A stretch of DNA of 64,000 nt, taken from positions 171,319-235,318 of IMG/VR virus record IMGVR_UViG_3300028864_000014; one strand, given 5' to 3'. The notes under the pieces were generated by a model. That model was not told the DNA's origin. It ran no database searches and was given only the letters and a program-made list of their open reading frames with translations. The position numbers and the translations under genes were made by a program. This document shows positions 26,155 to 50,634 of the stretch, in pieces. Every line of letters begins with the position of its first letter. Within the stretch, counting starts at the first letter, position 1.

Positions 26155-26584
26155 ATCTAATTGAATAATCAATTATTTTTAATTCTTTGAATGATTTTAA
26201 TAATAGAATTTTATTCATCTCATGATCATAATAACCAAAATAATTATAATCATTAAATTCCTTCTTATTGATTAATATTTTCTCAATTAATATATTTATC
26301 TTATACTCATTTTCATTATAATTCGATTCTAAAAAATTCCAAATATATTTATGATCACACCAAATGAATTTATTGTCTGTATCTTGAATGAATAAACATT
26401 CTCCATTTATTTTATGATTTAATAAATCATCATTAGAAATATTATTCAATTTTAATAATTTATTTTTCCTTATATAAGATTCATCATAATACCAATAAAT
26501 TTGATGATATAAATTTTCACTAACCACTGGATAACATGACAACAATTTGTCTAATAACCAATTTCTTAAATCATCTGTTGACAT
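26153..26584 (-). CDS. Family X paralog (dispersed copy)
   Basis: NWLLDKLLSCYPV..YWYYDESYIRKNKLLKLNN..CLFIQD..WNFLESNY. Confidence 0.8.
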   Translation of the reverse strand: MSTDDLRNWLLDKLLSCYPVVSENLYHQIYWYYDESYIRKNKLLKLNNISNDDLLNHKINGECLFIQDTDNKFIWCDHKYIWNFLESNYNENEYKINILIEKILINKKEFNDYNYFGYYDHEMNKILLLKSFKELKIIDYSIR

Positions 26585-28990: not shown

Positions 28991-30703
28991 TTAAGCGTAA
29001 TCTTCATCAAAATGAGCATTTAGTTCAATTCTAAAAAATTTAATAGCTGGAATTTTATAATAATAATTAACAGAATCAGCAGATAAAATAACAAATTCAT
29101 TGTCTGCAGTTGTAATTGCATAATCACTATAATACGATATTTTATCACTTGTTATTTCACTAAATAACACAGGTAAATCTATTCTATCTCCTATTTTATG
29201 AAATAACATTAACACAATTCCGAAAAAAGGACAGCTAAATTTAGGAAAGCTAACAGAAGGAGTATTAATGTCGTCATAAGGTATAATTTCTTCTGATTCA
29301 AATGGAATGCTCAACACTTTACGTACTATTGTACCAGATCCTTCATTTAACAATGAATAGTTTAGAACATCAGTTCCTGTTTTGAAAAAATAATCTGGTA
29401 AATATTGAGTACCATTATATAATACTGCTGAAAATACGTCCTTAATTGTATTACACACTTTGTATAATGTATCGGCTTCTAAAGTACTTCCAGTTGTTAA
29501 TATAGTAATATCCAATAGATTTTGTTTTTTACCGAAGTAATAACCAAATGCACTACCATCATCTTCCATTGATTGACTACCTTTAAATTTAACACCGTTA
29601 GGTATAGATATTGTGGTATGACTTCTCATTCTATTCCATATTTGATCAGATGCTGTATTAAAATCAAAAGTATTATCAACATTACCTCTGAGTAAAGTAG
29701 CTGCATTAACTACATCATCAGAACCATCAGAATTAACATTAATTTGAACATCTAAATCTGTAGGTAATATAGGATTAGCAGGACCAAAACATCCTACATA
29801 TCCACCTAAGTCAGATGCATATAACGCTTCATTATTCGACTGCGGATTTAAAGAATAATCTAATATACTACCATCAGTATTATACATATTGAAAATGTTG
29901 CCTGATGTTCCGCCATTTCTTGATTCTTTTATAATTCTACAAGTTTCATTTCCAAAAGAATCTATCATAAAAAGAGAATCTAAGTTTTGCTGGCTCATTC
30001 CAGATTCTAAATATAGATTTCTAATTATCTGTATATTTGTTTTTGAATCATTAGTCCATTCAGGCTGTATTAATGGAATATTATTATATTTAAATATACA
30101 AGTTGATGGGAATACAACATATTTATTTGTTCCATTACTTGTATTAATCCAATTATATTCAGATACTTGAATACAATTTTTTATTGTACAACTACCTATT
30201 TCGTTTCCTAAAAAAGTAGATTGTAATATATTCCTGTCTCTTCTACCATCATTAGAAGAACCACGAGCGATATTCTCAACTAATAAATAACTAAAATTAT
30301 TTAATGATGAAACATTATATGATTTTATTATTGAATGAGACCAAGCTCTACTATTAACTGATCCACTCACGGAATCTACTGTCATATTATTGCAAAATGG
30401 TCCTTCATATATAACTGGATTATAATTTAAGAATAATAATTGTTGATTAATATCATCTCCAATTAAATTTTTATTATTTAATTGAAAATATTCATTTATT
30501 ACACCTCTAAAAATTATATATGTTACTCCAATTTTTTGATTAGCCTTAAATATAGATTTATATGGATATTCACGAGTACCATCTCCTGAAAAATCATCTC
30601 CAATATAAGTATGTACAAATACAGTATTTATATTAGTTATTTGTGTGACTGAATCTGTACCATCATCATTTGGAACGAAACGTGTTTTAAATAAATTTGT
30701 CAT
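28991..30703 (-). CDS. module B beta-helix-type virion protein
   Basis: GDDFSGDGTREYPYKSIFKA cap; GGYVGCF, NVNSDGSDD, EIIPYD, RIELN shared with two paralogs. Confidence 0.75.
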   Translation of the reverse strand: MTNLFKTRFVPNDDGTDSVTQITNINTVFVHTYIGDDFSGDGTREYPYKSIFKANQKIGVTYIIFRGVINEYFQLNNKNLIGDDINQQLLFLNYNPVIYEGPFCNNMTVDSVSGSVNSRAWSHSIIKSYNVSSLNNFSYLLVENIARGSSNDGRRDRNILQSTFLGNEIGSCTIKNCIQVSEYNWINTSNGTNKYVVFPSTCIFKYNNIPLIQPEWTNDSKTNIQIIRNLYLESGMSQQNLDSLFMIDSFGNETCRIIKESRNGGTSGNIFNMYNTDGSILDYSLNPQSNNEALYASDLGGYVGCFGPANPILPTDLDVQINVNSDGSDDVVNAATLLRGNVDNTFDFNTASDQIWNRMRSHTTISIPNGVKFKGSQSMEDDGSAFGYYFGKKQNLLDITILTTGSTLEADTLYKVCNTIKDVFSAVLYNGTQYLPDYFFKTGTDVLNYSLLNEGSGTIVRKVLSIPFESEEIIPYDDINTPSVSFPKFSCPFFGIVLMLFHKIGDRIDLPVLFSEITSDKISYYSDYAITTADNEFVILSADSVNYYYKIPAIKFFRIELNAHFDEDYA

Positions 30704-30705
30704 AA

Positions 30706-30972
30706 TTAATTAATTTTTATTTTTATTTGTAAATCTGAGCAAGCCCAACTACTTTGATCACTATAAATATATTGAGGATAAATTGTTATTGTAAATTTAT
30801 CAAATATAACGGTATAAGAAATTGGTCTATTAAATATATCTAAAGAATCTGGAATTAGTTTATCATTAATTAAAATATTAACATTCTTATTATACCATTC
30901 TTTAAATTCTGAACTTTGCATAGATAGTAGTTTGGTTTCATCAAACTCTGTTGTGCCTGTTATTTGTATCAT
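30706..30972 (-). CDS. module A small protein (MIQITxTxEFDE)
   Basis: paralog of 34482-34748. Confidence 0.75.
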   Translation of the reverse strand: MIQITGTTEFDETKLLSMQSSEFKEWYNKNVNILINDKLIPDSLDIFNRPISYTVIFDKFTITIYPQYIYSDQSSWACSDLQIKIKIN

Positions 30973-30989
30973 TTTTTTTTATATTTTTT

Positions 30990-31211
30990 TTAATTAAATT
31001 GATATTCTATTATACTTGGTGGAGCCACATCACAACTAGGTCCAAATGTACTAAGAGTACAAATAATAGGTTTATCTACACTTATACCTAAAAACATCAT
31101 TTCAGGTTTATGTATAATACTAGTTGATAATCCTAAAAAACCCAATTCATGATCATGTGCAGCATTAGTTGATAATCCTAAAAAATTCAATGAAAGGTTA
31201 TTATTCCGCAT
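30990..31211 (-). CDS. module C peptide (ends IIEYQFN)
   Basis: 73 aa; 15-aa repeats FLGLST/FLGLST/FLGISV/FGPSC. Confidence 0.75.
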   Translation of the reverse strand: MRNNNLSLNFLGLSTNAAHDHELGFLGLSTSIIHKPEMMFLGISVDKPIICTLSTFGPSCDVAPPSIIEYQFN

Positions 31212-32712
31212 AATTTAAATTTAATTCTATTTTAATATAAACTATAACTTGGGGTCTTAATGTAACTCCTGTTATAAAATTTAAATCAAATGATTCATTA
31301 TCAGCATTTGTTACTGCCCAATTTCCATATTCAGTTAAATTTATATCTGAAATTACACCTAATTCAGACAATTCATTAAATAGAACAGGAACATTCGCAT
31401 CTATGTGATACCAAATTTGACAGATATCATTAAATGGTGTTGAATATCTTGGATAAGAACTAATTTGTGTTAAAGAATCATAAGGTATAATTTCAACACT
31501 TTCACAAGGAACTGATGATGTTGTAAATGTTCTATTCTTTCCAAAATAAAATCTATCTATTAACCCACTTTTTAGTTGAGCTTGACCACCTCCAGGTTTC
31601 ATACCTCTTGCATATGATAATACGTTACTTCTTGTTCTATTTCTAGTTTGAATAGAATCTTGTGAAGCGTAGAATCCAACTTTTCCGTTGCTAATCAATA
31701 AATCTGGTGTTGTTACTAAATCGTCACTACCATCTGAATTAACATTGTTTATATCACCAAACACTAATGGATTACTACTAAACTCACCAGATATATTAGG
31801 TTTGTAACAACCAACATACTGATGATCAAGTAATGTAGGATTAGCCATATAAAGAGCAATATTATTTCCATTAACATTAAGAGTATAATCAGATATAGAT
31901 CCATCAACATTATACCTATTAAATATTGGATATATAGAATCATCTACAATCTTATTAGTTTGTCCTATAGATATATCTGAATAAAATGATGTGTCTATTA
32001 ATAACCTCATATAAGTTTGAGATGTGCCAGATAATGTATTAGTAGCATAATTAGTTAATGATGATAACAACTCAGGTATTGAATTTATATTATCAGTATC
32101 TGGAATTATTTCTCCATTCCATTTCCAAACAGTTGTTTTTCTAAATAAACAATATTTGAATATTGGATAACAACTTAATGCTACTCTTGGAAATAAATCA
32201 ATCATTGATACATATATATTAGAATCCTGTATCATACCAGTTGAATCTGTCCAATTATCAAAATTTAAAAATGTTGTATTAGAATCACCATTAGAATAAG
32301 ATGCAGCTCGTGATGATGATTCTACAAAATTAAAACTATTTTGTCCATATGAACCTAATCCTTTTCTAGTAACGAAACAATTTTTTACTTCTCCATAATT
32401 GCCTGTAACTTCTAATACTCTAAGATTATATAAATTTGCGGTATAACTTCCATTACATATTCCATTAATATCAGCAGATACATTATCACCTATTATATCA
32501 ACATATGATGATATATTTTCTATTGTAGGACCGCTTAAAACAATTGATGATGCTGTACCCATAGCGGATATAGCCTTGGTTAAAGTGGCATATGGCAACT
32601 CTCTTGTTCCTGGATTAGTGTTTAATCCAACTATTGTACTAACAAATTTAGTGTTTGTATTTGTTAGTACAATGTTACTTTTTGGATGATAGTATATTCT
32701 AAATATTCCCAT
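31201..32712 (-). CDS. module B beta-helix-type virion protein
   Basis: NPGTRELPYATLTKA; EYGNWAVTNAD; IKIELNLNY. Confidence 0.75.
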   Translation of the reverse strand: MGIFRIYYHPKSNIVLTNTNTKFVSTIVGLNTNPGTRELPYATLTKAISAMGTASSIVLSGPTIENISSYVDIIGDNVSADINGICNGSYTANLYNLRVLEVTGNYGEVKNCFVTRKGLGSYGQNSFNFVESSSRAASYSNGDSNTTFLNFDNWTDSTGMIQDSNIYVSMIDLFPRVALSCYPIFKYCLFRKTTVWKWNGEIIPDTDNINSIPELLSSLTNYATNTLSGTSQTYMRLLIDTSFYSDISIGQTNKIVDDSIYPIFNRYNVDGSISDYTLNVNGNNIALYMANPTLLDHQYVGCYKPNISGEFSSNPLVFGDINNVNSDGSDDLVTTPDLLISNGKVGFYASQDSIQTRNRTRSNVLSYARGMKPGGGQAQLKSGLIDRFYFGKNRTFTTSSVPCESVEIIPYDSLTQISSYPRYSTPFNDICQIWYHIDANVPVLFNELSELGVISDINLTEYGNWAVTNADNESFDLNFITGVTLRPQVIVYIKIELNLNYAE

Positions 32713-32735
32713 AAATTATATATTTTTTATTATTT

Positions 32736-32918
32736 TTAATTAAATTGATATTCTATTATACTTGGTAATGCAGGATCTGTACTTATACCAAAAAATGTTA
32801 TATCACCTGGTACTAATGTTTCAACTGTTATGTTGATAAGTGATATTTCTGCAGGCATACCGCTAACAAATTGAGTGCAAGAAATAAAATCTATTGATAT
32901 GTTATTAATACGTTCCAT
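32736..32918 (-). CDS. module C peptide (ends IIEYQFN)
   Basis: 60 aa; FFGIST..PSIIEYQFN. Confidence 0.75.
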   Translation of the reverse strand: MERINNISIDFISCTQFVSGMPAEISLINITVETLVPGDITFFGISTDPALPSIIEYQFN

Positions 32919-34495
32919 TATAAATAATAATTAAGATTTATTTCTACTTTAGCATAATAGATTTTTATGTTATTTAGTTTTATACCAGGTAATGAGCTTA
33001 ATAAAAAACTTTCATAATCAGCATTTGTAACAGCCCAATTTCCGTACTCAGTTAAATTTTTATCAGTCACTATTCCAAATGATAAAAGATCATTAAATAA
33101 AATAGGTAAATTTGTTGTTGAGTTATACCACATTTGACACACACCATTAAACATAACTGAAAATCTCGGAAATGATGAAGGTTCTGTCATACTGTCATAT
33201 GGAATAATCTCTAATGATTCTTGAGGTAAAGATGGAGAATCTGTCACATTATATGCTTGAAATTTACCAAAAGAGAATCTACTTTCTAATCCAGATTTAA
33301 CTTGTCCTTGCATTCCAGCTAAAGAAAAACCACGTTTAAAAGTAAATACATTAGAACGAATTCTATTTCTTATCTGAACTGAATCAGCGGAACTAACAGT
33401 AAAATTACTATTGCCATTAAAAACTAGCATATCAGGAATTGTAACTAAGTCGTCAGAACCATCAGAATTCACATTTAATACATTGTTAAATGTTATCACA
33501 TCAGCATTTGCTTTGTAACATCCAACATAGTTTTTTTGATCGCTCATAGTTAAAGCAATGTTTTCAGAATTCAAAAACAAAGAATAATCAATAGGATTGT
33601 CATTTGTGTATCTATTAAATATTTTTTTGCTTCCTTCAATAGATGGTCTATCCTCAACTACCTTACATGTTTGTCCATTAATATCTATGTAAAATAAAGG
33701 AGACGTAATTTCATTTGGAAACATAGTCTGACAGTATGCTTTTTCCGTTGCATCTACAATGGTATTAGAAAAAATATACCATGCTGAAATTACATCTGTC
33801 ATATAATCATTCAATATATTACCATAAGTACCATAGTTAATAGGAACTATAATACCTTTCCATTTCCAAATTATTGTTTTTCTAAATAAACAATATTTGA
33901 AAATTTGAAAATTTGATATATTTGATACTGATGTATAATTATATAAATCTACTTCAATAACAAATATGAAATTTAATAAATTGACACCTGATATTTTACA
34001 ATAATTTTTAAAATTTAATACTGTATTATTTTTAATATTCAATCCATTACTTATTCCATTATTTGAACCTCCTTCTACTAAGCTATTGTAATTGTTAATA
34101 AAGTTACTCTCAACTATTGATGAACTCATTAACATTGTGTTTATACTTGAATTTATTATACCTCCAAGTCCAGTGAATTGTAATATTTTTATACCATAAA
34201 AAATGCTTGATCCATAATAATTACATGTCCAACTACCATTTAAATATGCATCTTCTCCATCTCCTATTAAATATCCATGAAAAAATGATGCTGGATTTTC
34301 AATAGTTTCTCCTCTATATAATATATTACGAGCATTATCATCATATAATGATGTAAATTTTGTCAATGTCGCAATTGGAAATTCTCTTGTTCCTGGATTA
34401 TTGTTGTTGCCAGTTATTGAACATACAAATGTGGTGTTTGCATCAGTGAGAACAGTATTTGTAACTGGATTATAGTATCTTTTAAATATTCCCAT
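32918..34495 (-). CDS. module B beta-helix-type virion protein
   Basis: NPGTREFPIATLTK; EYGNWAVTNAD; AKVEINLNY. Confidence 0.75.
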   Translation of the reverse strand: MGIFKRYYNPVTNTVLTDANTTFVCSITGNNNNPGTREFPIATLTKFTSLYDDNARNILYRGETIENPASFFHGYLIGDGEDAYLNGSWTCNYYGSSIFYGIKILQFTGLGGIINSSINTMLMSSSIVESNFINNYNSLVEGGSNNGISNGLNIKNNTVLNFKNYCKISGVNLLNFIFVIEVDLYNYTSVSNISNFQIFKYCLFRKTIIWKWKGIIVPINYGTYGNILNDYMTDVISAWYIFSNTIVDATEKAYCQTMFPNEITSPLFYIDINGQTCKVVEDRPSIEGSKKIFNRYTNDNPIDYSLFLNSENIALTMSDQKNYVGCYKANADVITFNNVLNVNSDGSDDLVTIPDMLVFNGNSNFTVSSADSVQIRNRIRSNVFTFKRGFSLAGMQGQVKSGLESRFSFGKFQAYNVTDSPSLPQESLEIIPYDSMTEPSSFPRFSVMFNGVCQMWYNSTTNLPILFNDLLSFGIVTDKNLTEYGNWAVTNADYESFLLSSLPGIKLNNIKIYYAKVEINLNYYL

Positions 34496-34748
34496 AAACT
34501 AGATATTTTTTAAAATTAAAATCTTGATTTCCAACAATTGGATAATATTCAGCCTCTACTGTTATATTACCAAATATCCAAGTCGATGGTCTTCCAAATT
34601 TATCAAATGTTGAACAAGTTTTTGATTCATCATTCTTAAAATTTATTTTACTTAAGCATTCAGTTTGAAACCATATCGTAAATCCAGATGATTGAAATTC
34701 TAAATCTTTAGATTCATCAAACTCTATTGTGTCTGTTATTTGTATCAT
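34482..34748 (-). CDS. module A small protein (MIQITxTxEFDE)
   Basis: paralog of 30706-30972. Confidence 0.75.
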   Translation of the reverse strand: MIQITDTIEFDESKDLEFQSSGFTIWFQTECLSKINFKNDESKTCSTFDKFGRPSTWIFGNITVEAEYYPIVGNQDFNFKKYLVYGNI

Positions 34749-34762
34749 ATTTTATTTGTTTT

Positions 34763-37700
34763 TTAGAAAATTATAATCGCATTAGCATTGTCATATCCAG
34801 TTTGTATTGCAATATCTAAAATAACTAAGTCAGTTAAAGCAGGTAAAGTTACTCCAACTAATGTTATTTCATCGTAAGTAATATCACTAATTGAAACAGT
34901 TACTCCTGAACAGTTAGTTGTTAATAATACTCTTGATATTGTTTTATCTGTTATCCATTGAAATCTTTGAGGACTTGGTGTGCTATTTGCTCCAATTTTA
35001 CTTAAAGATAAACTTTGAGGTATAATTGATGAATCAACAGTAATTCCATTTCCGTCAATACAAAGATGAATTTCACCACCATTAATAGGAGTAGGGTAAG
35101 AACCATCATTTTTCTTACAATAATATAATTTTCCTCCTGATATTTCAACAAACTGTCCTACACAATTATTATAAGTACCTCCATTTATCGTAGTAAATGA
35201 AGAAGATAATCCTTCACAATTAGTAAAAGTACCAGAGCAAATTCCATTAAAACTACCGTTATTCCCTTTACAATTTAAAAATGTACCAGTTAAATTATTT
35301 ACTTGAAAAATTAATACAGAATTTACATCTGTAAATGTTCCAGATAATGTATCAATTGAACTTGAAAATAATGGCAAATTATTAGAACTGAATATGTTTT
35401 TGAAAATACCTGAGCAATTAAAAATACCTGAAAACCCAGATCCCATTGTAATATTTATATTCTTAAATGTTCCAGATGCAGTAACATCACCATTAGTAGT
35501 ATCAGCTTGAATTTGTCCAGAGCAATTTTCAATATATAATTCTGGAAAATTTCCTGTTAGTTTTAAGCCACCGTCAATAAAGTTAATACCATTTATTTTT
35601 ATTTTATTATTAGTAATTATAACACCAGAACCACCAATATTTACATCGATATTTCCAGTAGATGAAACTAAATTTATATTTTGAGTATCTAAATTAAGAC
35701 TATCAGTTAGAAAACTATAATATCCAGGATATATAATAATATTAACTGGACTATCTGGTGCTGGTACTATAGCTTTCGCTATATTATACACATTTTGCAA
35801 TTCATTTCCATTTATTCCAGGATTACTATTTCCACCTTTTACTGTTAAAAATTGAGTTCCTATTGTTGGAGCAAAATCACCTCCCCCAATTATTTTTCCA
35901 TAACCGTCAATACATAATATAATTGTACCTCCACTTGAAGGTATTTCAAATGTACCTGGAGTAGTCAATCTACAATTATATAAACTTCCTGTTAATGCTC
36001 CACCTCGTGTAGAGTCACCAAAAGATTTACTTTTTGCTGTACAATTTATAAATGTTCCAGATGCAATACCATCAATTCCAAATGAAGTATTTCCAGCAGT
36101 ACAATTTATAAATGTTCCAGATACATTTGCTCCAACTTCATTTGTTCCAAATGAGAAATCTCCAGAATTACAATTAATAAATGTACCAGATAAAGATGTT
36201 GAAGAAAATCCAGTTTCAGCAGTACAATTTATAAATCTTCCAGATAAATCTCCATTCTCTCCATTAAACAACGCACCGTCTGATGTTATATTTTCAAAAT
36301 GACCAGGAAAGTCAGAAACACCTGATCCAAATGTGTTATTTGTTAATTTTAAATTTTTAAATGTTCCAGATAAAATAGTACTATTATCAATTGTGCTACC
36401 TTTAATTTGTCCTGAACAATTTTCAATCCTTAATCCAGGAAAATTTCCTCTTATTTCTAATCCCATACCTGTAAAATTTATACCAATTAATTTAATATTA
36501 TCTGTGATAATTAATATACCACTATAACCAATTTCAATATCTAATTCCCCTGTTGAAGAAATTAAATTTATATAAGGAGTATCTAAACTAATTAATGATG
36601 TCATTCCATAATAACCAGGATAAATAATTATATTAATTGGACTAATTATTGTTGGATTTAAAGCCTTAGCTATATTATAAACATTCTGTAACTCAGCTCC
36701 ATTTGTTCCAGGATCACTACTGATTCCTTTAACTGTTAAATATTGATTTCCATCTGATGGAGCAAAATCTCCTGCTCCTATTACTGCTCCATAACCGTCA
36801 ATACATAACAGAATAGTACCTCCACTTGAAGGAAGTCCAAATGTACCTGGCGTAGTCAATCTACAATTATATAAACTACCTGTTAATGTTCCACCTTGTT
36901 TAGAATCACCAAAAGATCCAGTATTACCTTTTGCTGTACAATTCACAAATGTTCCAGATGTCATACAATGAGCACCAAATGAAGAATTTCCAGCATTACA
37001 ATTAATAAATGTACCAGACACTTCTATTCCACTATTACCAAATGAATTATCACCAGAATTGCAATTAATAAAAGTAGTTCCAGATGATATAATACAACCT
37101 CCTCCTCCTCCAAATCCAGCATCATCACATGTACAATTTTCAAATGTCGCACCAGATGATATGACAGCTCCTCCTACACCAAATCCGTTTGCAGCATTAC
37201 AATTTTTGAATATACCAGATATAATTTTAGTATCATAAAATAAATTTCCACCTTTATGATATATATTTTCAAAATATCCAGATGCTTCTTGTATATAACC
37301 AAATCCATTACCATTAACTAAATTTATATCTTTAAAAGTTCCAGATAAATTAGTATCTGGATACGTTAAAATATTACCCCCATCTATCATTCCTGAACAA
37401 TTTTCAATCCATAACCCTGGAAAATTTCCAGTGAGTTTTAATCCACTACCTCCAAAAAATATACCTGTCAATTTAATATTATCTGAAATAACAATAGCGC
37501 CAGCAAATTCAATTTTAACATCTAATTCTCCTGTTGCTGATATTAAATTTATATAAGGAGTATCTAAACTAAGTCCATTAGACATTCCGTAATATCCAGG
37601 ATATATAATTATGTTTATAGGATTATTTGAACTCGGATTTATAGATTTTGCTAAATCATATACAGTTTGTAATTCCTCTCCATTTATTCCAGAATCAACA

Positions 37701-38770
37701 TTTTTTCCTTCAACAGTTAAATATTGAGCACCATCAGATGGAGCATAATTAGTTGGAATTCCAACTACATTAGTTGCTGATATATTTGTTATTTTTGATC
37801 CATCTCCACTCATTGTACCACCACTTACAACTAAATTACAATCTACTATTACATATCCAGTACTATTAATAGGTTTTATTGCTTCATAATCTGCATGTCT
37901 TATTGACTTTAATGCATCGCCAACATTATCTATTGTTATATTTGGATTGACACTTATCATATAAGACGTCATTGTTTCAAAATCAGAATTTAAAGGTACT
38001 CTCCAACCATCTGGATTATTTTGTATTAATGTGTTAGCTGCAAATAAGCAATATATTCTACCGTATATAACATTTATATCATTTTGAGTATATCCACTAG
38101 GCATGGTAAAAGGTAAATTAAATATTGCATAATCTTCTATAATATTTTCAATTGGATATTCAGCATAAGCAGGATATTGAGTACTAGTATTATACCACCA
38201 ATCATGATCATCCAAAGTTACTAATGAAGTTGTTGCAGATGATGCATAATCATATCCATTTATAACTCTTAAATTTTCTCTAGTCCAAATTTGAGTACCA
38301 ATTTTAACACAACTATATACATTTCCGTCTATATCTGTGAATCCAGATGAAATTATTTCTCCATCAGATAATAATGTTTCACCTGAAGTCGCTTCACGAG
38401 TTAGTCTTATTGAAAATCCATTATATCCAGACCATTCATTATATGAAATAGTAGATAATTGATTATCTAAAAGTGCAGCATAAAATTTAGTAGATGTACT
38501 ACCTGGTGTTGAAGTTCCAAAATAAGTTGAAAATCCGTTATTAAAATAAACTCCTTGGTTTCCTCTAATACCTGCTGTTACAGCGTCAAAATTATAATAA
38601 TCTTTTCCATATATATTATAATCCCCACTATACCACCAAAGAGGAAATTCAGTTGTAGTTCCAATAGTTGGTGGTACTTTTTCCCAATAACTTGCAGAAC
38701 TACTTCCAGTTAATCCGCTTTCAAATCCTCTAACCCATTCCTGACTAGCTAAATATATTATTTCACTCAT
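34763..38770 (-). CDS. large mosaic fibre/adhesin: LASxEWV tag, Fib_succ_major (FISUMP)-like region, three repeated beta-helix modules
   Basis: YLASQEWV; FTDIDGNVYSCVKIGTQIWTRENL..YGRIY..GWRVP; AP(S/T)xGxQYLTV..NGxELQxVY..IIIYPGYY x3; FINCxAG repeats. Confidence 0.8.
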   Translation of the reverse strand: MSEIIYLASQEWVRGFESGLTGSSSASYWEKVPPTIGTTTEFPLWWYSGDYNIYGKDYYNFDAVTAGIRGNQGVYFNNGFSTYFGTSTPGSTSTKFYAALLDNQLSTISYNEWSGYNGFSIRLTREATSGETLLSDGEIISSGFTDIDGNVYSCVKIGTQIWTRENLRVINGYDYASSATTSLVTLDDHDWWYNTSTQYPAYAEYPIENIIEDYAIFNLPFTMPSGYTQNDINVIYGRIYCLFAANTLIQNNPDGWRVPLNSDFETMTSYMISVNPNITIDNVGDALKSIRHADYEAIKPINSTGYVIVDCNLVVSGGTMSGDGSKITNISATNVVGIPTNYAPSDGAQYLTVEGKNVDSGINGEELQTVYDLAKSINPSSNNPINIIIYPGYYGMSNGLSLDTPYINLISATGELDVKIEFAGAIVISDNIKLTGIFFGGSGLKLTGNFPGLWIENCSGMIDGGNILTYPDTNLSGTFKDINLVNGNGFGYIQEASGYFENIYHKGGNLFYDTKIISGIFKNCNAANGFGVGGAVISSGATFENCTCDDAGFGGGGGCIISSGTTFINCNSGDNSFGNSGIEVSGTFINCNAGNSSFGAHCMTSGTFVNCTAKGNTGSFGDSKQGGTLTGSLYNCRLTTPGTFGLPSSGGTILLCIDGYGAVIGAGDFAPSDGNQYLTVKGISSDPGTNGAELQNVYNIAKALNPTIISPINIIIYPGYYGMTSLISLDTPYINLISSTGELDIEIGYSGILIITDNIKLIGINFTGMGLEIRGNFPGLRIENCSGQIKGSTIDNSTILSGTFKNLKLTNNTFGSGVSDFPGHFENITSDGALFNGENGDLSGRFINCTAETGFSSTSLSGTFINCNSGDFSFGTNEVGANVSGTFINCTAGNTSFGIDGIASGTFINCTAKSKSFGDSTRGGALTGSLYNCRLTTPGTFEIPSSGGTIILCIDGYGKIIGGGDFAPTIGTQFLTVKGGNSNPGINGNELQNVYNIAKAIVPAPDSPVNIIIYPGYYSFLTDSLNLDTQNINLVSSTGNIDVNIGGSGVIITNNKIKINGINFIDGGLKLTGNFPELYIENCSGQIQADTTNGDVTASGTFKNINITMGSGFSGIFNCSGIFKNIFSSNNLPLFSSSIDTLSGTFTDVNSVLIFQVNNLTGTFLNCKGNNGSFNGICSGTFTNCEGLSSSFTTINGGTYNNCVGQFVEISGGKLYYCKKNDGSYPTPINGGEIHLCIDGNGITVDSSIIPQSLSLSKIGANSTPSPQRFQWITDKTISRVLLTTNCSGVTVSISDITYDEITLVGVTLPALTDLVILDIAIQTGYDNANAIIIF

Positions 38771-38812
38771 AATTAATATTTTTTTTTATTTTCTTTATTT
38801 TTGAATATAAAT

Positions 38813-39172
38813 TTATTCAGTAACATAAGGAAATTCAAGATCTATTTTATTTATTTCAGAAAGCCATAAATCTTTTGATTGATTAGCTTTATCTATATTA
38901 TTAAGAGCCAGATATTTTTGATATGCCATATAATATGAATCACTTCTATCTTTATACGCCATACTTCTTTTAAATTTTATCTCATCATTATTATCAATGT
39001 GAGTTGGCATTCCAACAAAAACATTTAAATCATCTTCATAAACAGTTGTTGTTCCTGTTACATATATAACTTCTTTATATCCGTTTTCAATTGAATATGT
39101 TGTTGAATCTCCTAACAGCCAATTTGGTTGTGTAAAAAATTCTATTTTTCCTTCTATTAATTTTGCTTTCAT
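38813..39172 (-). CDS. tail-fibre assembly/chaperone-like protein
   Basis: RSMAYKDRSDSYY...WLSEINKIDLEFPY; position between fibre genes. Confidence 0.55.
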   Translation of the reverse strand: MKAKLIEGKIEFFTQPNWLLGDSTTYSIENGYKEVIYVTGTTTVYEDDLNVFVGMPTHIDNNDEIKFKRSMAYKDRSDSYYMAYQKYLALNNIDKANQSKDLWLSEINKIDLEFPYVTE

Positions 39173-39192
39173 ATTATCAATTAATTTTTATA

Positions 39193-39936
39193 TTATATTC
39201 CAAATCTGGATCTTATAGCAGTAAAATTATTCATAATTTCACTATCATTTAATGCTCTATTATATCTTCTTTGAGTTGCAATATACCCAGAAAAATGCTC
39301 TTGCATTGAATTGTATGCTCCAACATAATGTCCAGATGTATCTGAAAATGGTGTTGCTGGATTATATGGAACAGAATTTGAATTTACTAATTCACCATTT
39401 ATATAAATTCTGAATCCAGTATCACTTAATACTGCTGCTACATATGTCCAGGTATTTAAATATATATGACCACCAGACATCTCTCCATTATTTGTACAAT
39501 AAATCCATAAACTTCCATTATTCTGTACTCTGAATCTATATTGATATCCAAACCCTTTTGAACATATTTGTCTATTATCATTTAAATTATCACAATAAAT
39601 AACAGAATCTAATGTTATGTTGGTATTTAATGAACTAAAATCTGGTGAGACACCAACACCCATTCCTTGTGTTCCGTCAAACCTCATGCTACCTCCTCCT
39701 ATTGTTTGAAATTCATTTCCAGTATTTAGATACGCATTATTTTCTCTTCCTGTTAAATCATACCAAATATTTCCAGATTTAGGATAAGATGCTAGATTTC
39801 CTGCATCCAAATCTAAAACTGTTATTCCAGTTGTAGTGATACCAGTTATAATATCTGCTGATGCCCATAAATTATCTACACCTTTAAATGGTATAATTTC
39901 TTCTGGGTTAAATAATTCTCCGCTATAATATTTCAT
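39193..39936 (-). CDS. LamG/concanavalin A-like jelly-roll virion protein
   Basis: LDLDAGNLASYPKSGNIWYDLTG, WTYVAAV, RIYINGELV, RYNRAL, RSRFGI. Confidence 0.85.
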   Translation of the reverse strand: MKYYSGELFNPEEIIPFKGVDNLWASADIITGITTTGITVLDLDAGNLASYPKSGNIWYDLTGRENNAYLNTGNEFQTIGGGSMRFDGTQGMGVGVSPDFSSLNTNITLDSVIYCDNLNDNRQICSKGFGYQYRFRVQNNGSLWIYCTNNGEMSGGHIYLNTWTYVAAVLSDTGFRIYINGELVNSNSVPYNPATPFSDTSGHYVGAYNSMQEHFSGYIATQRRYNRALNDSEIMNNFTAIRSRFGI

Positions 39937-39937
39937 A

Positions 39938-40354
39938 TTAAATGTTTTTAATTGCTACTGCATAAATTTCAAAAGCAGTTTCTGTAAATACCTGTTCATA
40001 AACAATTGTCCAAGTAGAATTGATTCCTAAAATAGGAATATTTCCACGCCAAACAACTCCAGTCGGTTGATAAATTGTAGGTACTGAGCTTCCTGTTTTG
40101 AATATTAAAATTGATTCATTAACTAACCCATTTGCTGGAGTAGGAAGAATAACAGTTATTGTGTTTCCACTCGATATTGTTCCAATATATGTTTCAGTCC
40201 AATTATCTAAATTTAAATTTCCAGTAGGAGAATTTATTTTTTTATATTTATATACAGTATTGATTGTGACTCCACTACCAATTGCAACAGTTAATCCACT
40301 GAAAATATCACTAACCCATTCTTCACTTGCTAAATGTATTATATCTGAAGCCAT
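39938..40354 (-). CDS. short fibre-associated protein with LASEEWV tag
   Basis: IHLASEEWV; GVVWRGNIP..WTIVY. Confidence 0.7.
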   Translation of the reverse strand: MASDIIHLASEEWVSDIFSGLTVAIGSGVTINTVYKYKKINSPTGNLNLDNWTETYIGTISSGNTITVILPTPANGLVNESILIFKTGSSVPTIYQPTGVVWRGNIPILGINSTWTIVYEQVFTETAFEIYAVAIKNI

Positions 40355-40357
40355 AGA

Positions 40358-40687
40358 TTAAAATGTTATTTTATTTATAACGCCATTCATCATATAATTT
40401 ATAAATCCAGTTACTGTATCACCTTCGATCGTTACTGCAGATGCGATAAATTTATACACATCAGTTGGATTTACTAATGCTGGTTTTTTCAAATTATATG
40501 CTAATATTGCTTTGCTTACATCAGAAGGATTTGCAGTGTTTCCAGATGCGATTAATGCTAATATATCATTTTTAGCTGCAGTATCTCCAGAATTTGTACT
40601 TGATAATATTTTTTTCTGATCTTCTGTTGGAAATACTCGATCTTTTGGCATCCAAACTCCTTCACTTAGGGATATTAAATTTGTCAT
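40358..40687 (-). CDS. hypothetical late protein
   Basis: 109 aa; TTTATATATA upstream (40718-27). Confidence 0.7.
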   Translation of the reverse strand: MTNLISLSEGVWMPKDRVFPTEDQKKILSSTNSGDTAAKNDILALIASGNTANPSDVSKAILAYNLKKPALVNPTDVYKFIASAVTIEGDTVTGFINYMMNGVINKITF

Positions 40688-40763
40688 TTTTGTTATATTT
40701 TTTTTTGTTTATAATAGTATATATAAAAAACTCAAAGCAAAATAAGTCTATAATGATAAAAAA

Positions 40764-40793
40764 AAACTCAATTAACTATTATTAACTGAGTTT
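40764..40793 (-). terminator. ACTCAGTTAA-class palindrome (copy 1)
   Basis: Single mismatch is G-U only in minus-strand RNA, matching gene direction. Confidence 0.75.
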
Positions 40794-40811
40794 CTTATCT
40801 ATTTTTATATT

Positions 40812-43469
40812 TTATAAATTTGCATCTACAATAACCATTTTATCATAAATTAATTTTTGCTCTCCGTTTGAATTAACAAATAATTCTTTTGTGTAAGTAT
40901 TATAAATATACGTTGATGATGTTAAATCTAAATTAAAATAATTAAAATTGTCACATACAGTATTCATATTAAAATTACTACCAATTATAATATTTTGAAA
41001 ACTACTACCAATTGTGTTATTATTAAAACTATCACCAATAGTATTCTCAGAAAAATTACTACCAACAATATTATTCTTAAAATCTTCTCCAACTGTATTA
41101 GATTGAGAATAATTATTAATAGTATTATTTTTAAAATTATTTCCTACTGTAAATTCACAGCCACTACCGAATGTATTATATTGAAAATTGTCTAATGTTG
41201 TTAAATTACATTGACTTCCAATTGTATTATTTTGAAAATTACTACCGATTGTAAAATTGCATTGTCCAACAAATGTATTATTATAACAATTATCAGAAAT
41301 AGAACCGTTAATCTGACTACCAAAATTATTATTTGAAAATTGACTTCCTATTGTCAAATTACATTGATTTCCAAATACATTATCATAACAATTATCTCCA
41401 ATTGACAAATTACATTGACTACCAAATATATTATTAGAAAATCCTGATCCTCCTAATGACAAATTACATGAACTATTAAAAATATTATTGGAATAATTAT
41501 CACCTAGATTACATTTAGCCTGACTACCAAATGTATTATAACTAAAATAATTACCTAAAATACTATCTACAATAATTCCACCAAATATATTATACTGACA
41601 ATAATTTCCAATTTTGTTACGCACAAAATTGTTTTCAATTGTATTATTCCAAAAATCAGTACCAATTGTATCAAATTGACAATAATTTTTAAATGTATTA
41701 TATTTACTATTATTGCCTATATTAATCGTATTACATTGAATACCAAATATATTACCTTGTCCATTTAATATAGTAATATTTGAAGAGTTGCTTCCAATTG
41801 AATTATTAAAGCAACTACCAGAAAATATATTAAAGCTACATTGATATTCAATAACATTATTACTACAATTACCATCAAATGTATTATTCATACTATAACT
41901 TTCAATCGTATTATTAACATTATTAATACCAAATGTGTTACGAGAACATGAGTTTTTAATGATATTACTATTATTACCATTTCCAAATATATTATTACTG
42001 CACATGTTGCCTATTATATTATCATGAAAACTATTTCCTATTGTATTATATTGACAATCATGATCAATAATATTATCTTTACTATCATTACCAATTATAT
42101 TATAACTAAACTGGTGATTAATATTATTTTGATAAAAAGTAGTTCCAATTGTATTATTATAAAATGAATCTCCAATTGTATTATTATTAAAATTAGTATC
42201 TGTGGTATTATTACGATACTCATTTTTTATATTATTATATTGAAAATAATCTCTGTTTTTATTACTACCAAAATTATTTCCAATTATATTATCTGAAAAA
42301 TAGCTTTTGATATTATTATCTCCAAAATAATTTCCAGTTGTATTTGATACAAAATAATATCCAATACTATTATTTTGAAAACTTTTTCCAATATTATTAA
42401 AAATAAAATTATAGCTAATACTATTCTGATTGAAACTATTTTCTATTGTATTATTTTGAAAATCCATACCAATATTATTATTATAATATTGATTTATAAT
42501 ATTATTAAAAATAAAATTATTTCCAATAATATTATCAAAAATATAATCACCAATATTATTATTTTGAAAAAAATCACCAACACTATTATTATTAAAATAA
42601 TTTCCAATTATATTATTTTGAAAATAACCACCTATGCTATTATTAATAAAATTATTTCCAATAATTTTATTATATTGAAAATAACTTCCAAAAATTATAG
42701 TATTTTTATTGCTTATAATATCACCATTATTGGTATTACTATTATGTTGTTCTATCTTATTAGAATGAGAATAATTATAATTATTAATATCAGACCACAT
42801 ATTATAGTCAGTGTAACCTGTACTACATGAAATGTTTGAATTCCCAATGCTCCATACATTTTCAGTTGGACTCACATAAGACAAGTTATTCCATTTAAAT
42901 TGATTCCAATTATATGAAAAATTATTATCTCCAATAGTATTATTATATAAACAAATATAAATTGATCCATTGTATAAAACAACATCATTTTTTTGATATG
43001 TTGTTCCTGAATTCCAAACATTATTTACAATTATCTGCCATCTTCTAAATTTAACTTGTCTAAAATCAAATGATATATCATTATCTTGAATCGTATCTAT
43101 TCTTCTATAAATATATCCATATTGACAGCCAGGTACCATATTAGAATCATTTCTATAATTATAATATATTATATCCTGAGGATATAAACTTGAATGAGCC
43201 TCAACATTTAATGTATTAAAACTACTTGATATTACCAATAACGGTTCATTTATACCGTAATTAATATCACTTGTGTTTGTTATCTGATGTACTGTTTGAT
43301 AATCAGTAATCAAATATGCTTGGTTAGGAATTAAACTATTCGAGTTAATTAAATTTAGTAAATCATTATAAGTTAAATCTATAACTGATGTTCCGCCAGA
43401 ACCTCCACCTGTGGATCCAGTCAATTGACTATTAACCCACTCTTCACTAGCTAATTGAATATTTATCAT
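40812..43469 (-). CDS. Family F beta-solenoid fibre/adhesin (F5, 885 aa)
   Basis: MINIQLASEEWV; [43 protein letters not shown]; dozens of 9-11 aa NxIGxxF repeats; YTKELFV..YDKMVIVDANL. Confidence 0.8.
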   Translation of the reverse strand: MINIQLASEEWVNSQLTGSTGGGSGGTSVIDLTYNDLLNLINSNSLIPNQAYLITDYQTVHQITNTSDINYGINEPLLVISSSFNTLNVEAHSSLYPQDIIYYNYRNDSNMVPGCQYGYIYRRIDTIQDNDISFDFRQVKFRRWQIIVNNVWNSGTTYQKNDVVLYNGSIYICLYNNTIGDNNFSYNWNQFKWNNLSYVSPTENVWSIGNSNISCSTGYTDYNMWSDINNYNYSHSNKIEQHNSNTNNGDIISNKNTIIFGSYFQYNKIIGNNFINNSIGGYFQNNIIGNYFNNNSVGDFFQNNNIGDYIFDNIIGNNFIFNNIINQYYNNNIGMDFQNNTIENSFNQNSISYNFIFNNIGKSFQNNSIGYYFVSNTTGNYFGDNNIKSYFSDNIIGNNFGSNKNRDYFQYNNIKNEYRNNTTDTNFNNNTIGDSFYNNTIGTTFYQNNINHQFSYNIIGNDSKDNIIDHDCQYNTIGNSFHDNIIGNMCSNNIFGNGNNSNIIKNSCSRNTFGINNVNNTIESYSMNNTFDGNCSNNVIEYQCSFNIFSGSCFNNSIGSNSSNITILNGQGNIFGIQCNTINIGNNSKYNTFKNYCQFDTIGTDFWNNTIENNFVRNKIGNYCQYNIFGGIIVDSILGNYFSYNTFGSQAKCNLGDNYSNNIFNSSCNLSLGGSGFSNNIFGSQCNLSIGDNCYDNVFGNQCNLTIGSQFSNNNFGSQINGSISDNCYNNTFVGQCNFTIGSNFQNNTIGSQCNLTTLDNFQYNTFGSGCEFTVGNNFKNNTINNYSQSNTVGEDFKNNIVGSNFSENTIGDSFNNNTIGSSFQNIIIGSNFNMNTVCDNFNYFNLDLTSSTYIYNTYTKELFVNSNGEQKLIYDKMVIVDANL

Positions 43470-43594
43470 ATATTAAAAAATTATTTATTCTATATATTAA
43501 AAATTAGAAATAAAAATAATTTTTTAAGAAGATTTAACTATTGATAATTGTCAATTTTTTAAAAGGAGTTTATGGTATAAATATATATACTTAT

Positions 43595-43897
43595 ATGAAT
43601 GGAATATATAAAAACCCAAGAGTAGGGGTCAATCAGTATGGTAACAATGTTGCTCCTATTAAACAGACAGATGAATTTAATTATTTAATTAATCTAAATG
43701 TAAATAGCATTATAAATTTTGATAACGGTACTGATGAGTTGAAAGATAGCGGAGAAATAATACTTCCTAGAAAATATCATATATTTGTAGGTACTAAGGA
43801 CGATGAATTGAAATTTAAACCTTATGAATATGATCAATATAGAATTGTAGTTACCACTTATAAAGATATTATAATTAGTATAGATTCATTAGGATAA
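43595..43897 (+). CDS. hypothetical protein
   Basis: track ORF 43541 (TTG); ATG 43595 after TATATATA preferred; start uncertain. Confidence 0.6.
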   Translation: MNGIYKNPRVGVNQYGNNVAPIKQTDEFNYLINLNVNSIINFDNGTDELKDSGEIILPRKYHIFVGTKDDELKFKPYEYDQYRIVVTTYKDIIISIDSLG

Positions 43898-43974
43898 TTT
43901 TAAATTGTTTTACAAAAAAATGGTATGCATTATATCCCTATAAAAGGTATTTATTGCATACCATTTTATAATTA

Positions 43975-44235
43975 TTATAATTTAAAACTTTCATCATCAT
44001 CAAAATCAAATTCATCACATGGTTCATCATCAAATAAATCCAAATTAAAATCCAAATTATCTAACTTAATTTTATTAGGTAGATTAAGTGGTATAGTTGT
44101 AGATGCTGAATTAATAATAACAGAATTTGAATTATTTATTTCTTCAAGTTTTCTTCTACGAATATATTGTTCAAGATCCTTTACATCAATTGAATTCAAT
44201 ATATCATCTATGTCAATGTTTACATTTAAGTTCAT
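43975..44235 (-). CDS. DIKDIEK-subfamily protein with RKxKL motif and acidic tail
   Basis: LNSIDVKDLEQYIRRRKLEEI...DDEPCDEFDFDDDE. Confidence 0.75.
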   Translation of the reverse strand: MNLNVNIDIDDILNSIDVKDLEQYIRRRKLEEINNSNSVIINSASTTIPLNLPNKIKLDNLDFNLDLFDDEPCDEFDFDDDESFKL

Positions 44236-45492: not shown

Positions 45493-46266
<774 letters not shown>

Positions 46267-46267
<1 letters not shown>

Positions 46268-46677
46268 TGACAAAAGAAGAATTAAGTGATTTTATATTGG
46301 AGACATTAAAAAAATGCTATAAAGTTAAACATGAGGATTATCCAAGTATAATTTTTTGGATATATGATGAACAATTCATTAGAAAAATTAAATTAGGCAA
46401 AATAAATAATCAAGACATAAAAATTACAAATGAAATTAACGGAACTTGTATATTTCAACAAGATTTTAAAAAATTAAAATTTCGTTGTAATGATGATATT
46501 TGGACTTTTTTATTCAGATACTATTCCGATGATTACTATGATAATCAGAAATTCATGAAAGATATACTAAAAAATATTACTAATTTAAATATGTATTTAC
46601 CAACAATGAATTCATCAACAGCTAATATATCATTGAAAAATTACAAGAAAATAAGTTTATATTTAAATGATGTATAA
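46267..46677 (+). CDS. Family X paralog, array 3/13
   Basis: same motif set. Confidence 0.85.
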
Positions 46678-47065
46678 AAAAGATTTATATGATTGGTTCT
46701 GGAATAAATATAATTCCTGCTATCAAGTTAAAGTAGAATTATATCCAGATAGTGTATTCTTAGTTTATGACGAAAAATATATAAGAAAACTTAAATTGTT
46801 TAAATTAAATAATACAGAAGAGTTAATTTCAATTAATAATGTTGAAGGAACATTTTTATTTAATCAGGATAATAAATTTAGAATTTTATGGCTGAGTGAA
46901 GAATTGTGGAAGTTCTTTGAAAAAAACTATTCATATGACTACTATGATATTCAAAAACTAATAAAAAAACTACTAAAAGATCATCCAATTTTATTCGATT
47001 ATAATCCTTTACCTGGTATGATTAAAAATATATATGAAAATAGTATTATAAAATCAAGATTATAA
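46667..47065 (+). CDS. Family X paralog, array 4/13
   Basis: same motif set. Confidence 0.85.
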   Translation: MMYKKDLYDWFWNKYNSCYQVKVELYPDSVFLVYDEKYIRKLKLFKLNNTEELISINNVEGTFLFNQDNKFRILWLSEELWKFFEKNYSYDYYDIQKLIKKLLKDHPILFDYNPLPGMIKNIYENSIIKSRL

Positions 47066-47985
<920 letters not shown>

Positions 47986-47989
47986 TAAT

Positions 47990-50626
<2,637 letters not shown>

Positions 50627-50634
<8 letters not shown>

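What the first reader, a model, noticed from the sequence alone, without database searches (positions are those of the whole stretch)
37850..38700. Apparently circularly permuted Fib_succ_major (FISUMP, C-type-lectin-like) domain
Seen: in the 1335-aa protein, motifs typical of the domain's C-half (FDAVTAGIR..G.YF..G..YF.TST..GFSIRL) come before those of its N-half (FTDIDGNVY..VKIGTQIWTRENL..YGRIY..GWRVP..GDALKS). The latter is not followed by a C-half. Established: the usual order is N-half then GxSVRC-type end, and CLec-fold domains are common DGR targets with the variable region at the C-terminus. Inference: a permuted binding domain whose usual variable end is moved inside the protein.
Basis: partly seen in the sequence, partly recalled or inferred. 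Interest (0 to 1): 0.6.

Follow-up and report, generated by a model that had tools for sequence, protein, structure and literature searches.

The report
Circularly permuted lectin-like phage domain
A large fibre- or spike-like protein of an uncultured peat phage carries a known lectin-like (FISUMP) domain whose two halves are in swapped order, and this swapped version is a conserved, apparently undescribed phage family that standard domain models detect only by halves.

Summary
In the 1335-aa product of window 34763-38770 (-), residues 46-129 match the last part of the FISUMP domain and residues 141-308 match its first part. Together they cover the model once, and nothing FISUMP-like follows or lies in neighbouring frames.

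It is not an assembly artefact. The same protein occurs on at least 14 contigs, and contigs from four other peat metagenome runs bridge the junction.

It is a real circular permutation:
- At least 24 other cluster representatives show the same order in one end-to-end alignment (26-38% identity). Some are stand-alone proteins of 262-276 aa.
- On a tree of re-ordered domains, 26 of 27 such units form one clade (support 0.97).
- AlphaFold2 gives one rigid body (pTM 0.78).
- The two halves, folded as separate chains, dock with ipSAE 0.82 against 0.00 for the best control. The old terminal strands pair in that model.

A second permuted order, with a different cut point, also occurs in phages.

However, the segment equivalent to a DGR variable region is hypervariable between family members.

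The most likely role, by inference only, is a host-surface-binding module of a phage fibre or spike protein.

The parts
34763..38770 (-). Gene for the 1335-aa fibre- or spike-like protein (P0001) that carries the permuted domain
   Evidence: ORF list and translation. The identical or near-identical protein occurs on at least 14 contigs from JGI and ENA.
38732..38770 (-). Residues 1-13: N-terminal motif shared with seven other minus-strand ORFs of the window. Presumed common attachment motif (inference).
   Evidence: DNA similarity of this 5' end to the starts of two other ORFs.
38384..38635 (-). Residues 46-129: the C-terminal part of the FISUMP domain, placed first
   Evidence: TIGR02145 positions 100-173. 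Own HMM positions 163-238, E 3e-6. Aligns end to end with the family.
38423..38530 (-). Residues 81-116: hypervariable segment of the family, equivalent in position to the variable region of DGR-targeted CLec domains
   Evidence: Mean pairwise identity is 0.11-0.12 here, against 0.78-0.83 in the N-half among 8 close relatives. No differences here in contigs of four other runs.
38342..38401 (-). Residues 124-143: linker joining the old C-terminal strand to the old N-terminal strand. Conserved in both permuted phage types and in tandem arrays.
37847..38350 (-). Residues 141-308: the N-terminal part of the FISUMP domain, placed second. Ends at the family's conserved LKS motif.
   Evidence: PF09603 positions 1-108. 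Own HMM positions 36-173, E 2e-28..
36767..37747 (-). Residues 342-668: first of three tandem repeats, probably a right-handed beta-helix (inference from sequence pattern only)
   Evidence: 56% identical to repeat 2. No Pfam family.
35876..36766 (-). Residues 669-965: second tandem repeat
35027..35875 (-). Residues 966-1248: third tandem repeat
   Evidence: 46% identical to repeat 2.
34766..35026 (-). Residues 1249-1335: C-terminal tail of unknown fold
   Evidence: no family match.

Best explanation
Residues about 46-300 of this phage protein form one globular FISUMP (Fib_succ_major, C-type-lectin/FGE-like) domain with circularly permuted connectivity. Dividing the canonical domain into segments N1, N2 and C, the chain here runs C, linker, N1, N2.

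The chain enters at the loop that in ordinary domains joins the LKS motif to the following conserved tryptophan. It runs through the last third of the fold and crosses an 18-20-residue linker that ties the old C-terminal strand to the old N-terminal strand. It then runs through the first two thirds and leaves next to where it entered.

The protein is a divergent member of a conserved clade of such permuted domains in phage structural proteins. The clade most likely arose once, by duplication and truncation within phage tandem FISUMP arrays.

By inference only, the domain is a host-surface (probably glycan) binding module. It sits between a shared N-terminal attachment motif and three beta-helix-like repeats of a fibre or spike protein. 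Its specificity would be set by the hypervariable segment at residues 81-116.
For: Shown by sequence:
- The halves are swapped and complementary.
- In the search of 1.84 billion representatives, many proteins align with query positions 3-255 in a single stretch at 35-40% identity.
- With my HMM, 23 of the best 150 representatives are single units [positions ~150-238]+[36-152]. Three more carry one such unit plus a unit of the other permuted order. One protein has two such units 330 aa apart.
- Stand-alone proteins of 262, 275 and 276 aa consist of just this unit. P0159 is a complete gene between two others.
- The alignment with 26 such units runs end to end.
- In ordinary phage-type domains the motifs at the new ends are contiguous, so the cut point is exact.
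- On a tree of re-ordered domains, 26 of 27 units form one clade including the query (support 0.97).

Predicted:
- AlphaFold2 on residues 40-312 with that alignment gives pLDDT 74.5 and pTM 0.78. Confidence is low only at the ends and in one loop.
- The N-half and C-half, folded as two chains, score ipSAE 0.82 (three runs: 0.83, 0.82, 0.78) against 0.00 for the best of 3 controls. That mark was reached by 58 of 80 solved complexes and 2 of 110 mismatched pairs. The runs share at least 89% of contacts and the partner's pLDDT is 81-82.
- The tightest contacts pair the old last strand (residues 120-125) with the old first strand (160-167) and with the GWRV strand (255-258). The new ends (53-64 and 280-291) touch.

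All ESM Atlas neighbours are PF09603 clusters.

Not an artefact.

Phage structural context: a family member sits in the structural module of a crAss-like contig, another carries phage tail fibre repeats, and the neighbouring genes are lectin-, CBM- and collagen-like.
Against: - No experimental structure exists for any FISUMP domain in the PDB copy searched. The fold assignment therefore rests on weak structural matches (Z 2.4-3.2) and on predictions.
- I could not read model coordinates, so the permutation was not tested with a permutation-aware structural aligner.
- The docking used my own alignments, so its calibration counts hold only roughly. It also cannot tell intra-chain from inter-chain complementation.
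- The query is a divergent member. It lacks the family's HPRW and YNW motifs, and its loop at about residues 180-230 is modelled poorly.
- The binding function and the ligand are inference only. No FISUMP ligand is established.
Confidence: 0.82

Rival explanations
1. Domain-swapped complementation. The C-part of one chain completes the N-part of a neighbouring chain in an oligomeric fibre, so the unit is inter-chain rather than a single-chain permuted domain.
For: The docking test treats the halves as separate chains and so fits this equally well. Fibre and spike proteins are usually trimers (general knowledge).
Against: The 18-20-residue linker joins strands that are adjacent in the model. 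The single-chain AlphaFold2 model is one rigid body (pTM 0.78). Small stand-alone proteins carry the same order. The unit occurs at N-terminal, middle and C-terminal positions of very different proteins.
Confidence: 0.08
2. Decayed tandem array. The gene keeps the tail of one FISUMP domain and the head of the next, and the two pieces do not form a working domain.
For: Phage tandem arrays with the same linker exist and could give such a remnant (P0010, P0212).
Against: The pieces tile the model exactly once. The same cut point is conserved in at least 24 other representatives down to 26-38% identity, with strongly conserved N1 and N2 segments. A remnant would not be kept as a stand-alone 262-aa gene.
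Confidence: 0.04
3. Target of a diversity-generating retroelement whose variable region now lies near the N-terminus of the domain.
For: Fib_succ_major/DUF1566-type CLec domains are known DGR targets (PMC5758913). The equivalent segment is hypervariable between family members. The record is only about 33% complete by CheckV, so a reverse transcriptase could lie elsewhere.
Against: - No RVT_1 match in the 235 kb.
- No template-like repeat of the region in the genome, nor in 20 loci holding relatives with FISUMP domains of all three orders.
- The cluster members differ only at residues 195, 217, 370 and 397.
- Contigs of four other runs show no differences in the segment.
- Family variation includes length changes, which DGRs do not make.
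Confidence: 0.04
4. Assembly or gene-calling artefact (local rearrangement, frameshift, or wrong start).
For: The window comes from a metagenome assembly.
Against: - The same protein occurs on at least 14 contigs from two sources, the longest 243 kb.
- Contigs of four other runs bridge the junction; one 1334-bp contig covers 37543-38876 with no difference.
- The N-terminal motif is shared with seven paralogous gene starts.
- No FISUMP piece occurs in any other frame nearby.
Confidence: 0.01

Closest known systems
FISUMP / Fib_succ_major domain (Pfam PF09603, NCBIfam TIGR02145)
   Same: Clear sequence homology over the whole domain content, above both curated cut-offs. Same conserved motifs in each segment. 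All ESM Atlas structural neighbours are PF09603 clusters.
   Different: The segment order is C, N1, N2 instead of N1, N2, C. The family's conserved cysteines are replaced in the query (an N-P-D-G-W stretch and a final S-I-R-L). There is no lipoprotein signal. The protein is a phage structural protein rather than a Bacteroidota or Fibrobacter surface protein. Pfam sees only profile positions 1 to about 88-130 in all 11 members tested.
Phage FISUMP units in the order N2, C, N1 (for example P0246, P0288, and loci L007, L015, L016)
   Same: Same phage-type lineage and the same linker after the old C-terminal strand. They are 40% identical to the query over residues 55-168 and lie next to the query's clade on the tree. 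Three proteins carry both orders, and genes with the two orders are adjacent in L021.
   Different: The cut point lies between N1 and N2 (HMM position about 97-104) rather than between N2 and C (about 150-163).
CLec/FGE-fold variable proteins of DGRs (TaqVP 5vf4, TvpA 2y3c, Mtd)
   Same: They are the best, though weak, structural matches to the N-half (Z 2.4-3.2). The hypervariable patch lies in the same part of the fold.
   Different: No retroelement is found here. The chain order is permuted. The variation includes insertions and deletions.
Classic natural circular permutants formed by duplication and truncation (for example the cases reviewed in PMC3320104)
   Same: Complementary halves, native termini adjacent and joined by a linker, and tandem arrays in the same lineage that could be intermediates.
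   Different: Here two different permuted orders and the native order coexist in one phage lineage, sometimes in one protein.

Membership tests
FISUMP / Fib_succ_major (PF09603, TIGR02145) | Sequence match above the curated cut-off | tested here: met
   PF09603 scores 43.3 bits against 33.9. TIGR02145 scores 60.9 bits against 41.65 on residues 1-330.
FISUMP / Fib_succ_major (PF09603, TIGR02145) | Whole domain in the canonical order in one stretch | tested here: not met
   The C-part (profile 100-173) precedes the N-part (profile 7-118).
FISUMP / Fib_succ_major (PF09603, TIGR02145) | Conserved cysteines suggesting extracellular disulfides, and a lipoprotein or secretion signal (as summarised in PMC5758913) | tested here: not met
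   In the query, the cysteines before the GW motif and at the end of the last strand are replaced. In the permuted family the last-strand cysteine is replaced in most members but retained in a few. The N-terminus is a motif shared by the phage's paralogues, not a signal peptide. No signal-peptide predictor was run.
Circular permutant of a known domain | Two segments homologous to complementary parts of the parent domain, covering it once | tested here: met
   HMM positions 163-238 followed by 36-173.
Circular permutant of a known domain | The permuted order is conserved in independent homologues, including proteins that hold only this unit | tested here: met
Circular permutant of a known domain | The segments fold into one domain, with the parent's termini adjacent and the new termini adjacent | tested here: met
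   By prediction only. pTM is 0.78. ipSAE is 0.82 against 0.00 for the best control, with strand pairing of residues 120-125 to 160-167 and contact between 53-64 and 280-291. No experimental structure and no permutation-aware superposition.
C-type-lectin / FGE-sulfatase-like fold | Significant structural similarity to solved members | tested here: inconclusive
   VIA-align gives Z 3.2, 2.9 and 2.7 (TaqVP, PvdO, TvpA) and Z 2.4 (TaqVP, the only hit). Foldseek against the PDB finds nothing. Sequential aligners can only see one half.
DGR variable (target) protein | A DGR reverse transcriptase in the same element | tested here: not met
   No RVT_1 match in the 235-kb record. The record is incomplete.
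DGR variable (target) protein | A template repeat matching the variable region with adenine-specific differences | tested here: not met
   No repeat of window 37800-38770 elsewhere in the genome. None in the loci of relatives.
Phage tail fibre / receptor-binding protein | Virion component that binds the host surface | not testable with these tools
   Context only. PHROGs has no family for it.

The most novel reading that the evidence does not exclude
The phage FISUMP lineage preserves a complete natural record of circular permutation by duplication and truncation. All three cyclic orders of one three-segment lectin-like domain exist as stand-alone units, together with tandem arrays in shifted register that look like intermediates.

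The order C, N1, N2 would have been fixed because it puts the hypervariable binding segment between two conserved flanks right after the point where the chain enters the domain. Binding specificities could then be exchanged as cassettes by recombination between phages.
Probability: 0.25. Interest if true: 0.65.

Novelty: new variant of a known kind. Interest (0 to 1): 0.5.

Why it matters
- **Annotation.** Pfam and NCBIfam models report only a 'partial' Fib_succ_major hit for this whole clade. In all 11 members tested the Pfam match stops at profile position 87-130 of 187. PHROGs has no family for it. A dedicated profile in permuted order would annotate these phage proteins correctly.
- **Protein evolution.** One lineage holds the native order, two different permuted orders and candidate tandem intermediates. 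This makes it a good natural system for studying how permutation arises and what it costs.
- **Phage biology.** The domain marks candidate host-binding proteins in crAss-like and very large uncultured phages. The mapped hypervariable segment is a concrete candidate for the specificity determinant.
- **Literature.** I found no paper in the held library that links circular permutation with FISUMP, DUF1566, FGE-sulfatase or CLec-fold domains. That library is incomplete, so this is not proof that the family is undescribed.

Tried and rejected
- **Pfam on the N-terminal pieces alone** gave nothing for the C-part. It was found only by TIGR02145 and by my own HMM.
- **tblastn against isolated phage genomes:** no match.
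- **PHROGs:** no family.
- **PDB by sequence**, single protein and profile: nothing relevant.
- **Foldseek against the PDB,** both models: nothing.
- **First AlphaFold2 model,** built on a patchwork alignment of half-domains: mediocre (pLDDT 61.6). Replaced by the family-based model.
- **Word-index search with the family profile:** returned mostly ordinary FISUMP proteins and did not separate the orders.
- **Split gene or wrong start:** rejected.
- **DGR:** rejected on present data.
- **crAss-type capsid in this record:** no match, but the control genomes did not match either, so this is uninformative.
- **High contig depth just upstream of the start codon:** this is an A-rich low-complexity stretch, not a feature.
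- **Limits.** The tree used domain sequences re-ordered in a script and a random sample of 45 of the ordinary units. The N2, C, N1 label inside tandem arrays is ambiguous, so I draw no conclusion about how often that order arose.

Full report
**What is there**

The window is the last 64 kb of a 235-kb IMG/VR virus record. It has about 24% G+C and is judged about 33% complete by CheckV. The finding lies in the 5' part of a minus-strand gene, window 34763-38770, which encodes a 1335-aa protein, P0001.

The protein has these parts:
- A 13-residue N-terminal motif shared with seven other minus-strand ORFs of the window.
- A spacer.
- The FISUMP-like region, residues about 46-308.
- Three tandem repeats of about 300 residues, 56% and 46% identical to one another. 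No family matches them.
- A short tail.

The neighbouring genes encode a ConA-like lectin domain, a CBM_5_12 module, collagen-like repeats and DUF1565-like starts. This is a block of fibre- or spike-like structural genes.

**Checking the observation**

Pfam PF09603 matches only residues 155-290, and only profile positions 1-108 of 187.

Residues 46-123 match positions 100-173 of 176. Only after that do residues about 146-170 match positions 7-31 and residues 234-308 match positions 44-118.

I built an HMM from 61 ordinary single-domain FISUMP proteins. It places residues 50-129 on positions 163-238 (E 3e-6) and residues 141-308 on positions 36-173 (E 2e-28). The two pieces therefore tile the domain once, with a 10-position overlap.

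In 48 ordinary multi-domain FISUMP proteins the same query segments always come in the opposite order. A six-frame search of window 30000-44000 finds no further piece.

**Not an artefact**

The identical protein, or one with one or two substitutions, is on record from at least 14 contigs of JGI and ENA assemblies, the longest 243 kb. The stretch occurs in many peat-metagenome runs; 14 of them hold half or more of its sampled words. Contigs from four runs that are not flagged as the source bridge the junction between the two parts. One 1334-base contig covers 37543-38876 without a single difference.

**It is a family, not a one-off**

A scan of IMG/VR found phage ORFs that are 40% identical to residues 55-168. 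That stretch is the C-part, a clearly homologous linker, and the start of the N-part.

In those ORFs the domain runs N2, C, linker, N1. I use N1 for the first hairpin region, N2 for the part from the YG-x-LY motif to the LKS motif, and C for the rest. Their pieces also tile my HMM exactly once, for example positions 90-239 followed by 38-93.

The exhaustive search of 1.84 billion representatives with residues 40-310 gave 3902 hits. Many align with query positions 3-255 in one stretch at 35-40% identity. Classified with my HMM, the best 150 comprise:
- 91 ordinary proteins.
- 23 proteins with a single unit [positions ~150-238]+[36-152].
- 19 proteins in the N2, C, N1 register.
- 3 proteins with one unit of each permuted order.
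- One of the 23 (P0178) has two C, N1, N2 units 330 residues apart.
- Several proteins have N2, C, N1 units separated by long spacers.

Stand-alone proteins exist in all three orders:
- L017 and L019 in the native order.
- P0246 and P0288 as N2, C, N1.
- P0159 (262 aa), P0231 (275 aa) and P0273 (276 aa) as C, N1, N2.

P0159 is a complete gene flanked by two others. The upstream gene carries an N2, C, N1 unit.

The query aligns end to end with 26 C, N1, N2 units at 26-38% identity. In ordinary phage-type domains the motifs that form the new ends are contiguous, so the cut point is exact.

I re-ordered the pieces by HMM position in a script and built a FastTree tree of 132 units. On it, 26 of the 27 C, N1, N2 units form one clade that includes the query (support 0.97). 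Their nearest neighbours are N2, C, N1 units, with weak support. The query's closest relatives are P0175, P0192 and P0232, and P0232 also carries phage tail fibre repeats.

**Do the halves fold together?**

A first AlphaFold2 model, built on a patchwork alignment, was mediocre (pLDDT 61.6, pTM 0.62).

With the family alignment, residues 40-312 give pLDDT 74.5 and pTM 0.78. Confidence is low only at the two ends and in one loop, P0001 residues about 180-230. With 56 of 273 residues poorly modelled, a pTM of 0.78 implies that essentially all ordered residues sit in one rigid body. That last step is my inference.

I then folded the two halves as separate chains, each with its own alignment, alongside controls:
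- ipSAE was 0.82 (runs 0.83, 0.82, 0.78). The best of three controls scored 0.00.
- That mark was reached by 58 of 80 solved complexes and 2 of 110 mismatched pairs. These counts hold only roughly, because my own alignments were used.
- The runs share at least 89% of their contacts, and the partner's pLDDT is 81-82.
- The interface has 244-260 contacts, which is what two halves of one domain would give.

The tightest contacts pair residues 120-125 (the old last strand) with 160-167 (the old first strand) and with 255-258. Residues 280-291 touch 53-64, so the new ends are adjacent. This is the geometry expected of a permutant. It is a prediction, not a measurement.

**Fold and known structures**

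No FISUMP domain has a solved relative by sequence or by Foldseek.

VIA-align finds only weak matches, but they point one way. For the second model, TaqVP is the only chain with Z of 2 or more. In each case the match covers the N-part only, as expected from a sequential aligner.

All ten ESM Atlas neighbours are PF09603 clusters. The best is a viral cluster of 226-aa proteins that aligns with query residues 10-235, meaning the C-part, the linker and N1. BFVD returns two significant hits; the top one (A0A6J5N676) is annotated as a phage FISUMP protein, the second (A0A1B1IUD2) has no name in the tables at hand.

**The DGR idea**

Fib_succ_major/DUF1566-type domains are known DGR targets (PMC5758913). 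Here, however:
- There is no RVT_1 match in the 235 kb.
- There is no template-like repeat of the region in the genome, nor in 20 loci holding relatives with FISUMP domains of all three orders.
- The cluster members differ only at residues 195, 217, 370 and 397.
- Contigs of four other runs show no change in the segment.

Contigs hide rare variants and the record is incomplete, so a DGR is unlikely but not excluded.

Between family members, though, residues 81-116 are hypervariable. Mean pairwise identity there is 0.11-0.12, even among eight relatives whose N1 and N2 segments are 78-83% identical, and the segment also varies in length. That segment sits where DGR variable regions sit in CLec folds. 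It is the obvious candidate for the binding-specificity determinant.

**Most likely function**

This is inference. The domain is a host-surface-binding module, probably for a glycan, in a phage fibre or spike protein. Support is contextual:
- A family member lies in the structural module of a crAss-like contig, next to a capsid gene and a ring protein gene.
- Another member carries phage tail fibre repeats.
- The gene's neighbours here are lectin-, CBM- and collagen-like, and eight genes share its N-terminal motif.

Because the native termini of this fold are adjacent, the permuted domain, like the native one, can be placed anywhere in a chain. In the family it is found at N-terminal, middle and C-terminal positions.

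**Novelty**

Circular permutation as such is well known. What seems undescribed is a conserved permuted clade of the FISUMP domain in phages, together with a second permuted order in the same lineage.

Four searches of the held literature found no paper linking circular permutation with FISUMP, DUF1566, FGE-sulfatase or CLec-fold domains. That library is incomplete.

Current models under-annotate the clade. In all ten further members tested, Pfam again stops at profile position 87-130 of 187, and PHROGs has nothing. I rate it a new variant of a known kind, of moderate interest.

**Limits**

- I could not read model coordinates, so no permutation-aware superposition was done.
- The docking test does not separate intra-chain from inter-chain packing.
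- Only the best 150 of 3902 hits could be classified, so the size of the family is a lower bound.

Noticed in passing
window 45493-51091 (+); also 26153-26584 (-): Thirteen consecutive small genes (116-168 aa) are paralogues of one another, 35-50% identical, with a conserved cysteine-containing N-terminal half. A fourteenth copy appears to lie on the other strand at 26153-26584. Function unknown.
   Followed up: partly
window gene starts at 38770, 40354, 43469, 52870, 55305, 57197, 58874, 61074 (all minus strand): Eight ORFs begin with the same motif of about 13 residues, followed in several by Gly-rich or collagen-like runs. This looks like a set of alternative fibre or spike proteins sharing one attachment motif.
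   Followed up: partly
window 28991-30703, 31201-32712, 32918-34495 (-): Three adjacent genes of 503-570 aa, all with a beta-helix (DUF1565-like) start of the G-T-R-E type. The two at 31201-32712 and 32918-34495 also share an almost identical N-terminus. The DUF1565 match is weak, for one of the three (E 0.006, below the cut-off).
   Followed up: no
window 39193-39936 and 40812-43469 (-): The genes just upstream carry a Laminin_G_3/ConA-like lectin domain (E 1e-19) and a CBM_5_12 carbohydrate-binding module (E 2e-6). These are further carbohydrate-binding modules in the same gene block.
   Followed up: no
window 35027-37747 (-), P0001 residues 342-1248: Three tandem repeats of about 300 residues within the same protein (56% and 46% identity), each with repeated N-C-x-x-G-x-x-S-F-G-like turns. 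No Pfam family matches them.
   Followed up: partly
L021:1-2002: In a 2.8-kb peat contig, a gene with an N2, C, N1 FISUMP unit is directly followed (8-bp overlap) by the 262-aa gene with the C, N1, N2 unit. The two permuted orders are therefore neighbours.
   Followed up: partly
P0010, P0162, P0198, P0212, P0238 and others: These phage-type tandem FISUMP arrays start in the middle of a domain and end with the missing first part, so they are shifted in register. They could be arrays of permuted units or intermediates of permutation by duplication and truncation.
   Followed up: partly
whole window: The window has about 24% G+C, no tRNA genes, and strand and GC-skew switches near 24 kb, 45 kb and 51 kb. 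The phage is found in many peat-metagenome runs (14 hold half or more of the sampled words). CheckV rates the 235-kb record only 33% complete, which would imply a very large genome.
   Followed up: no
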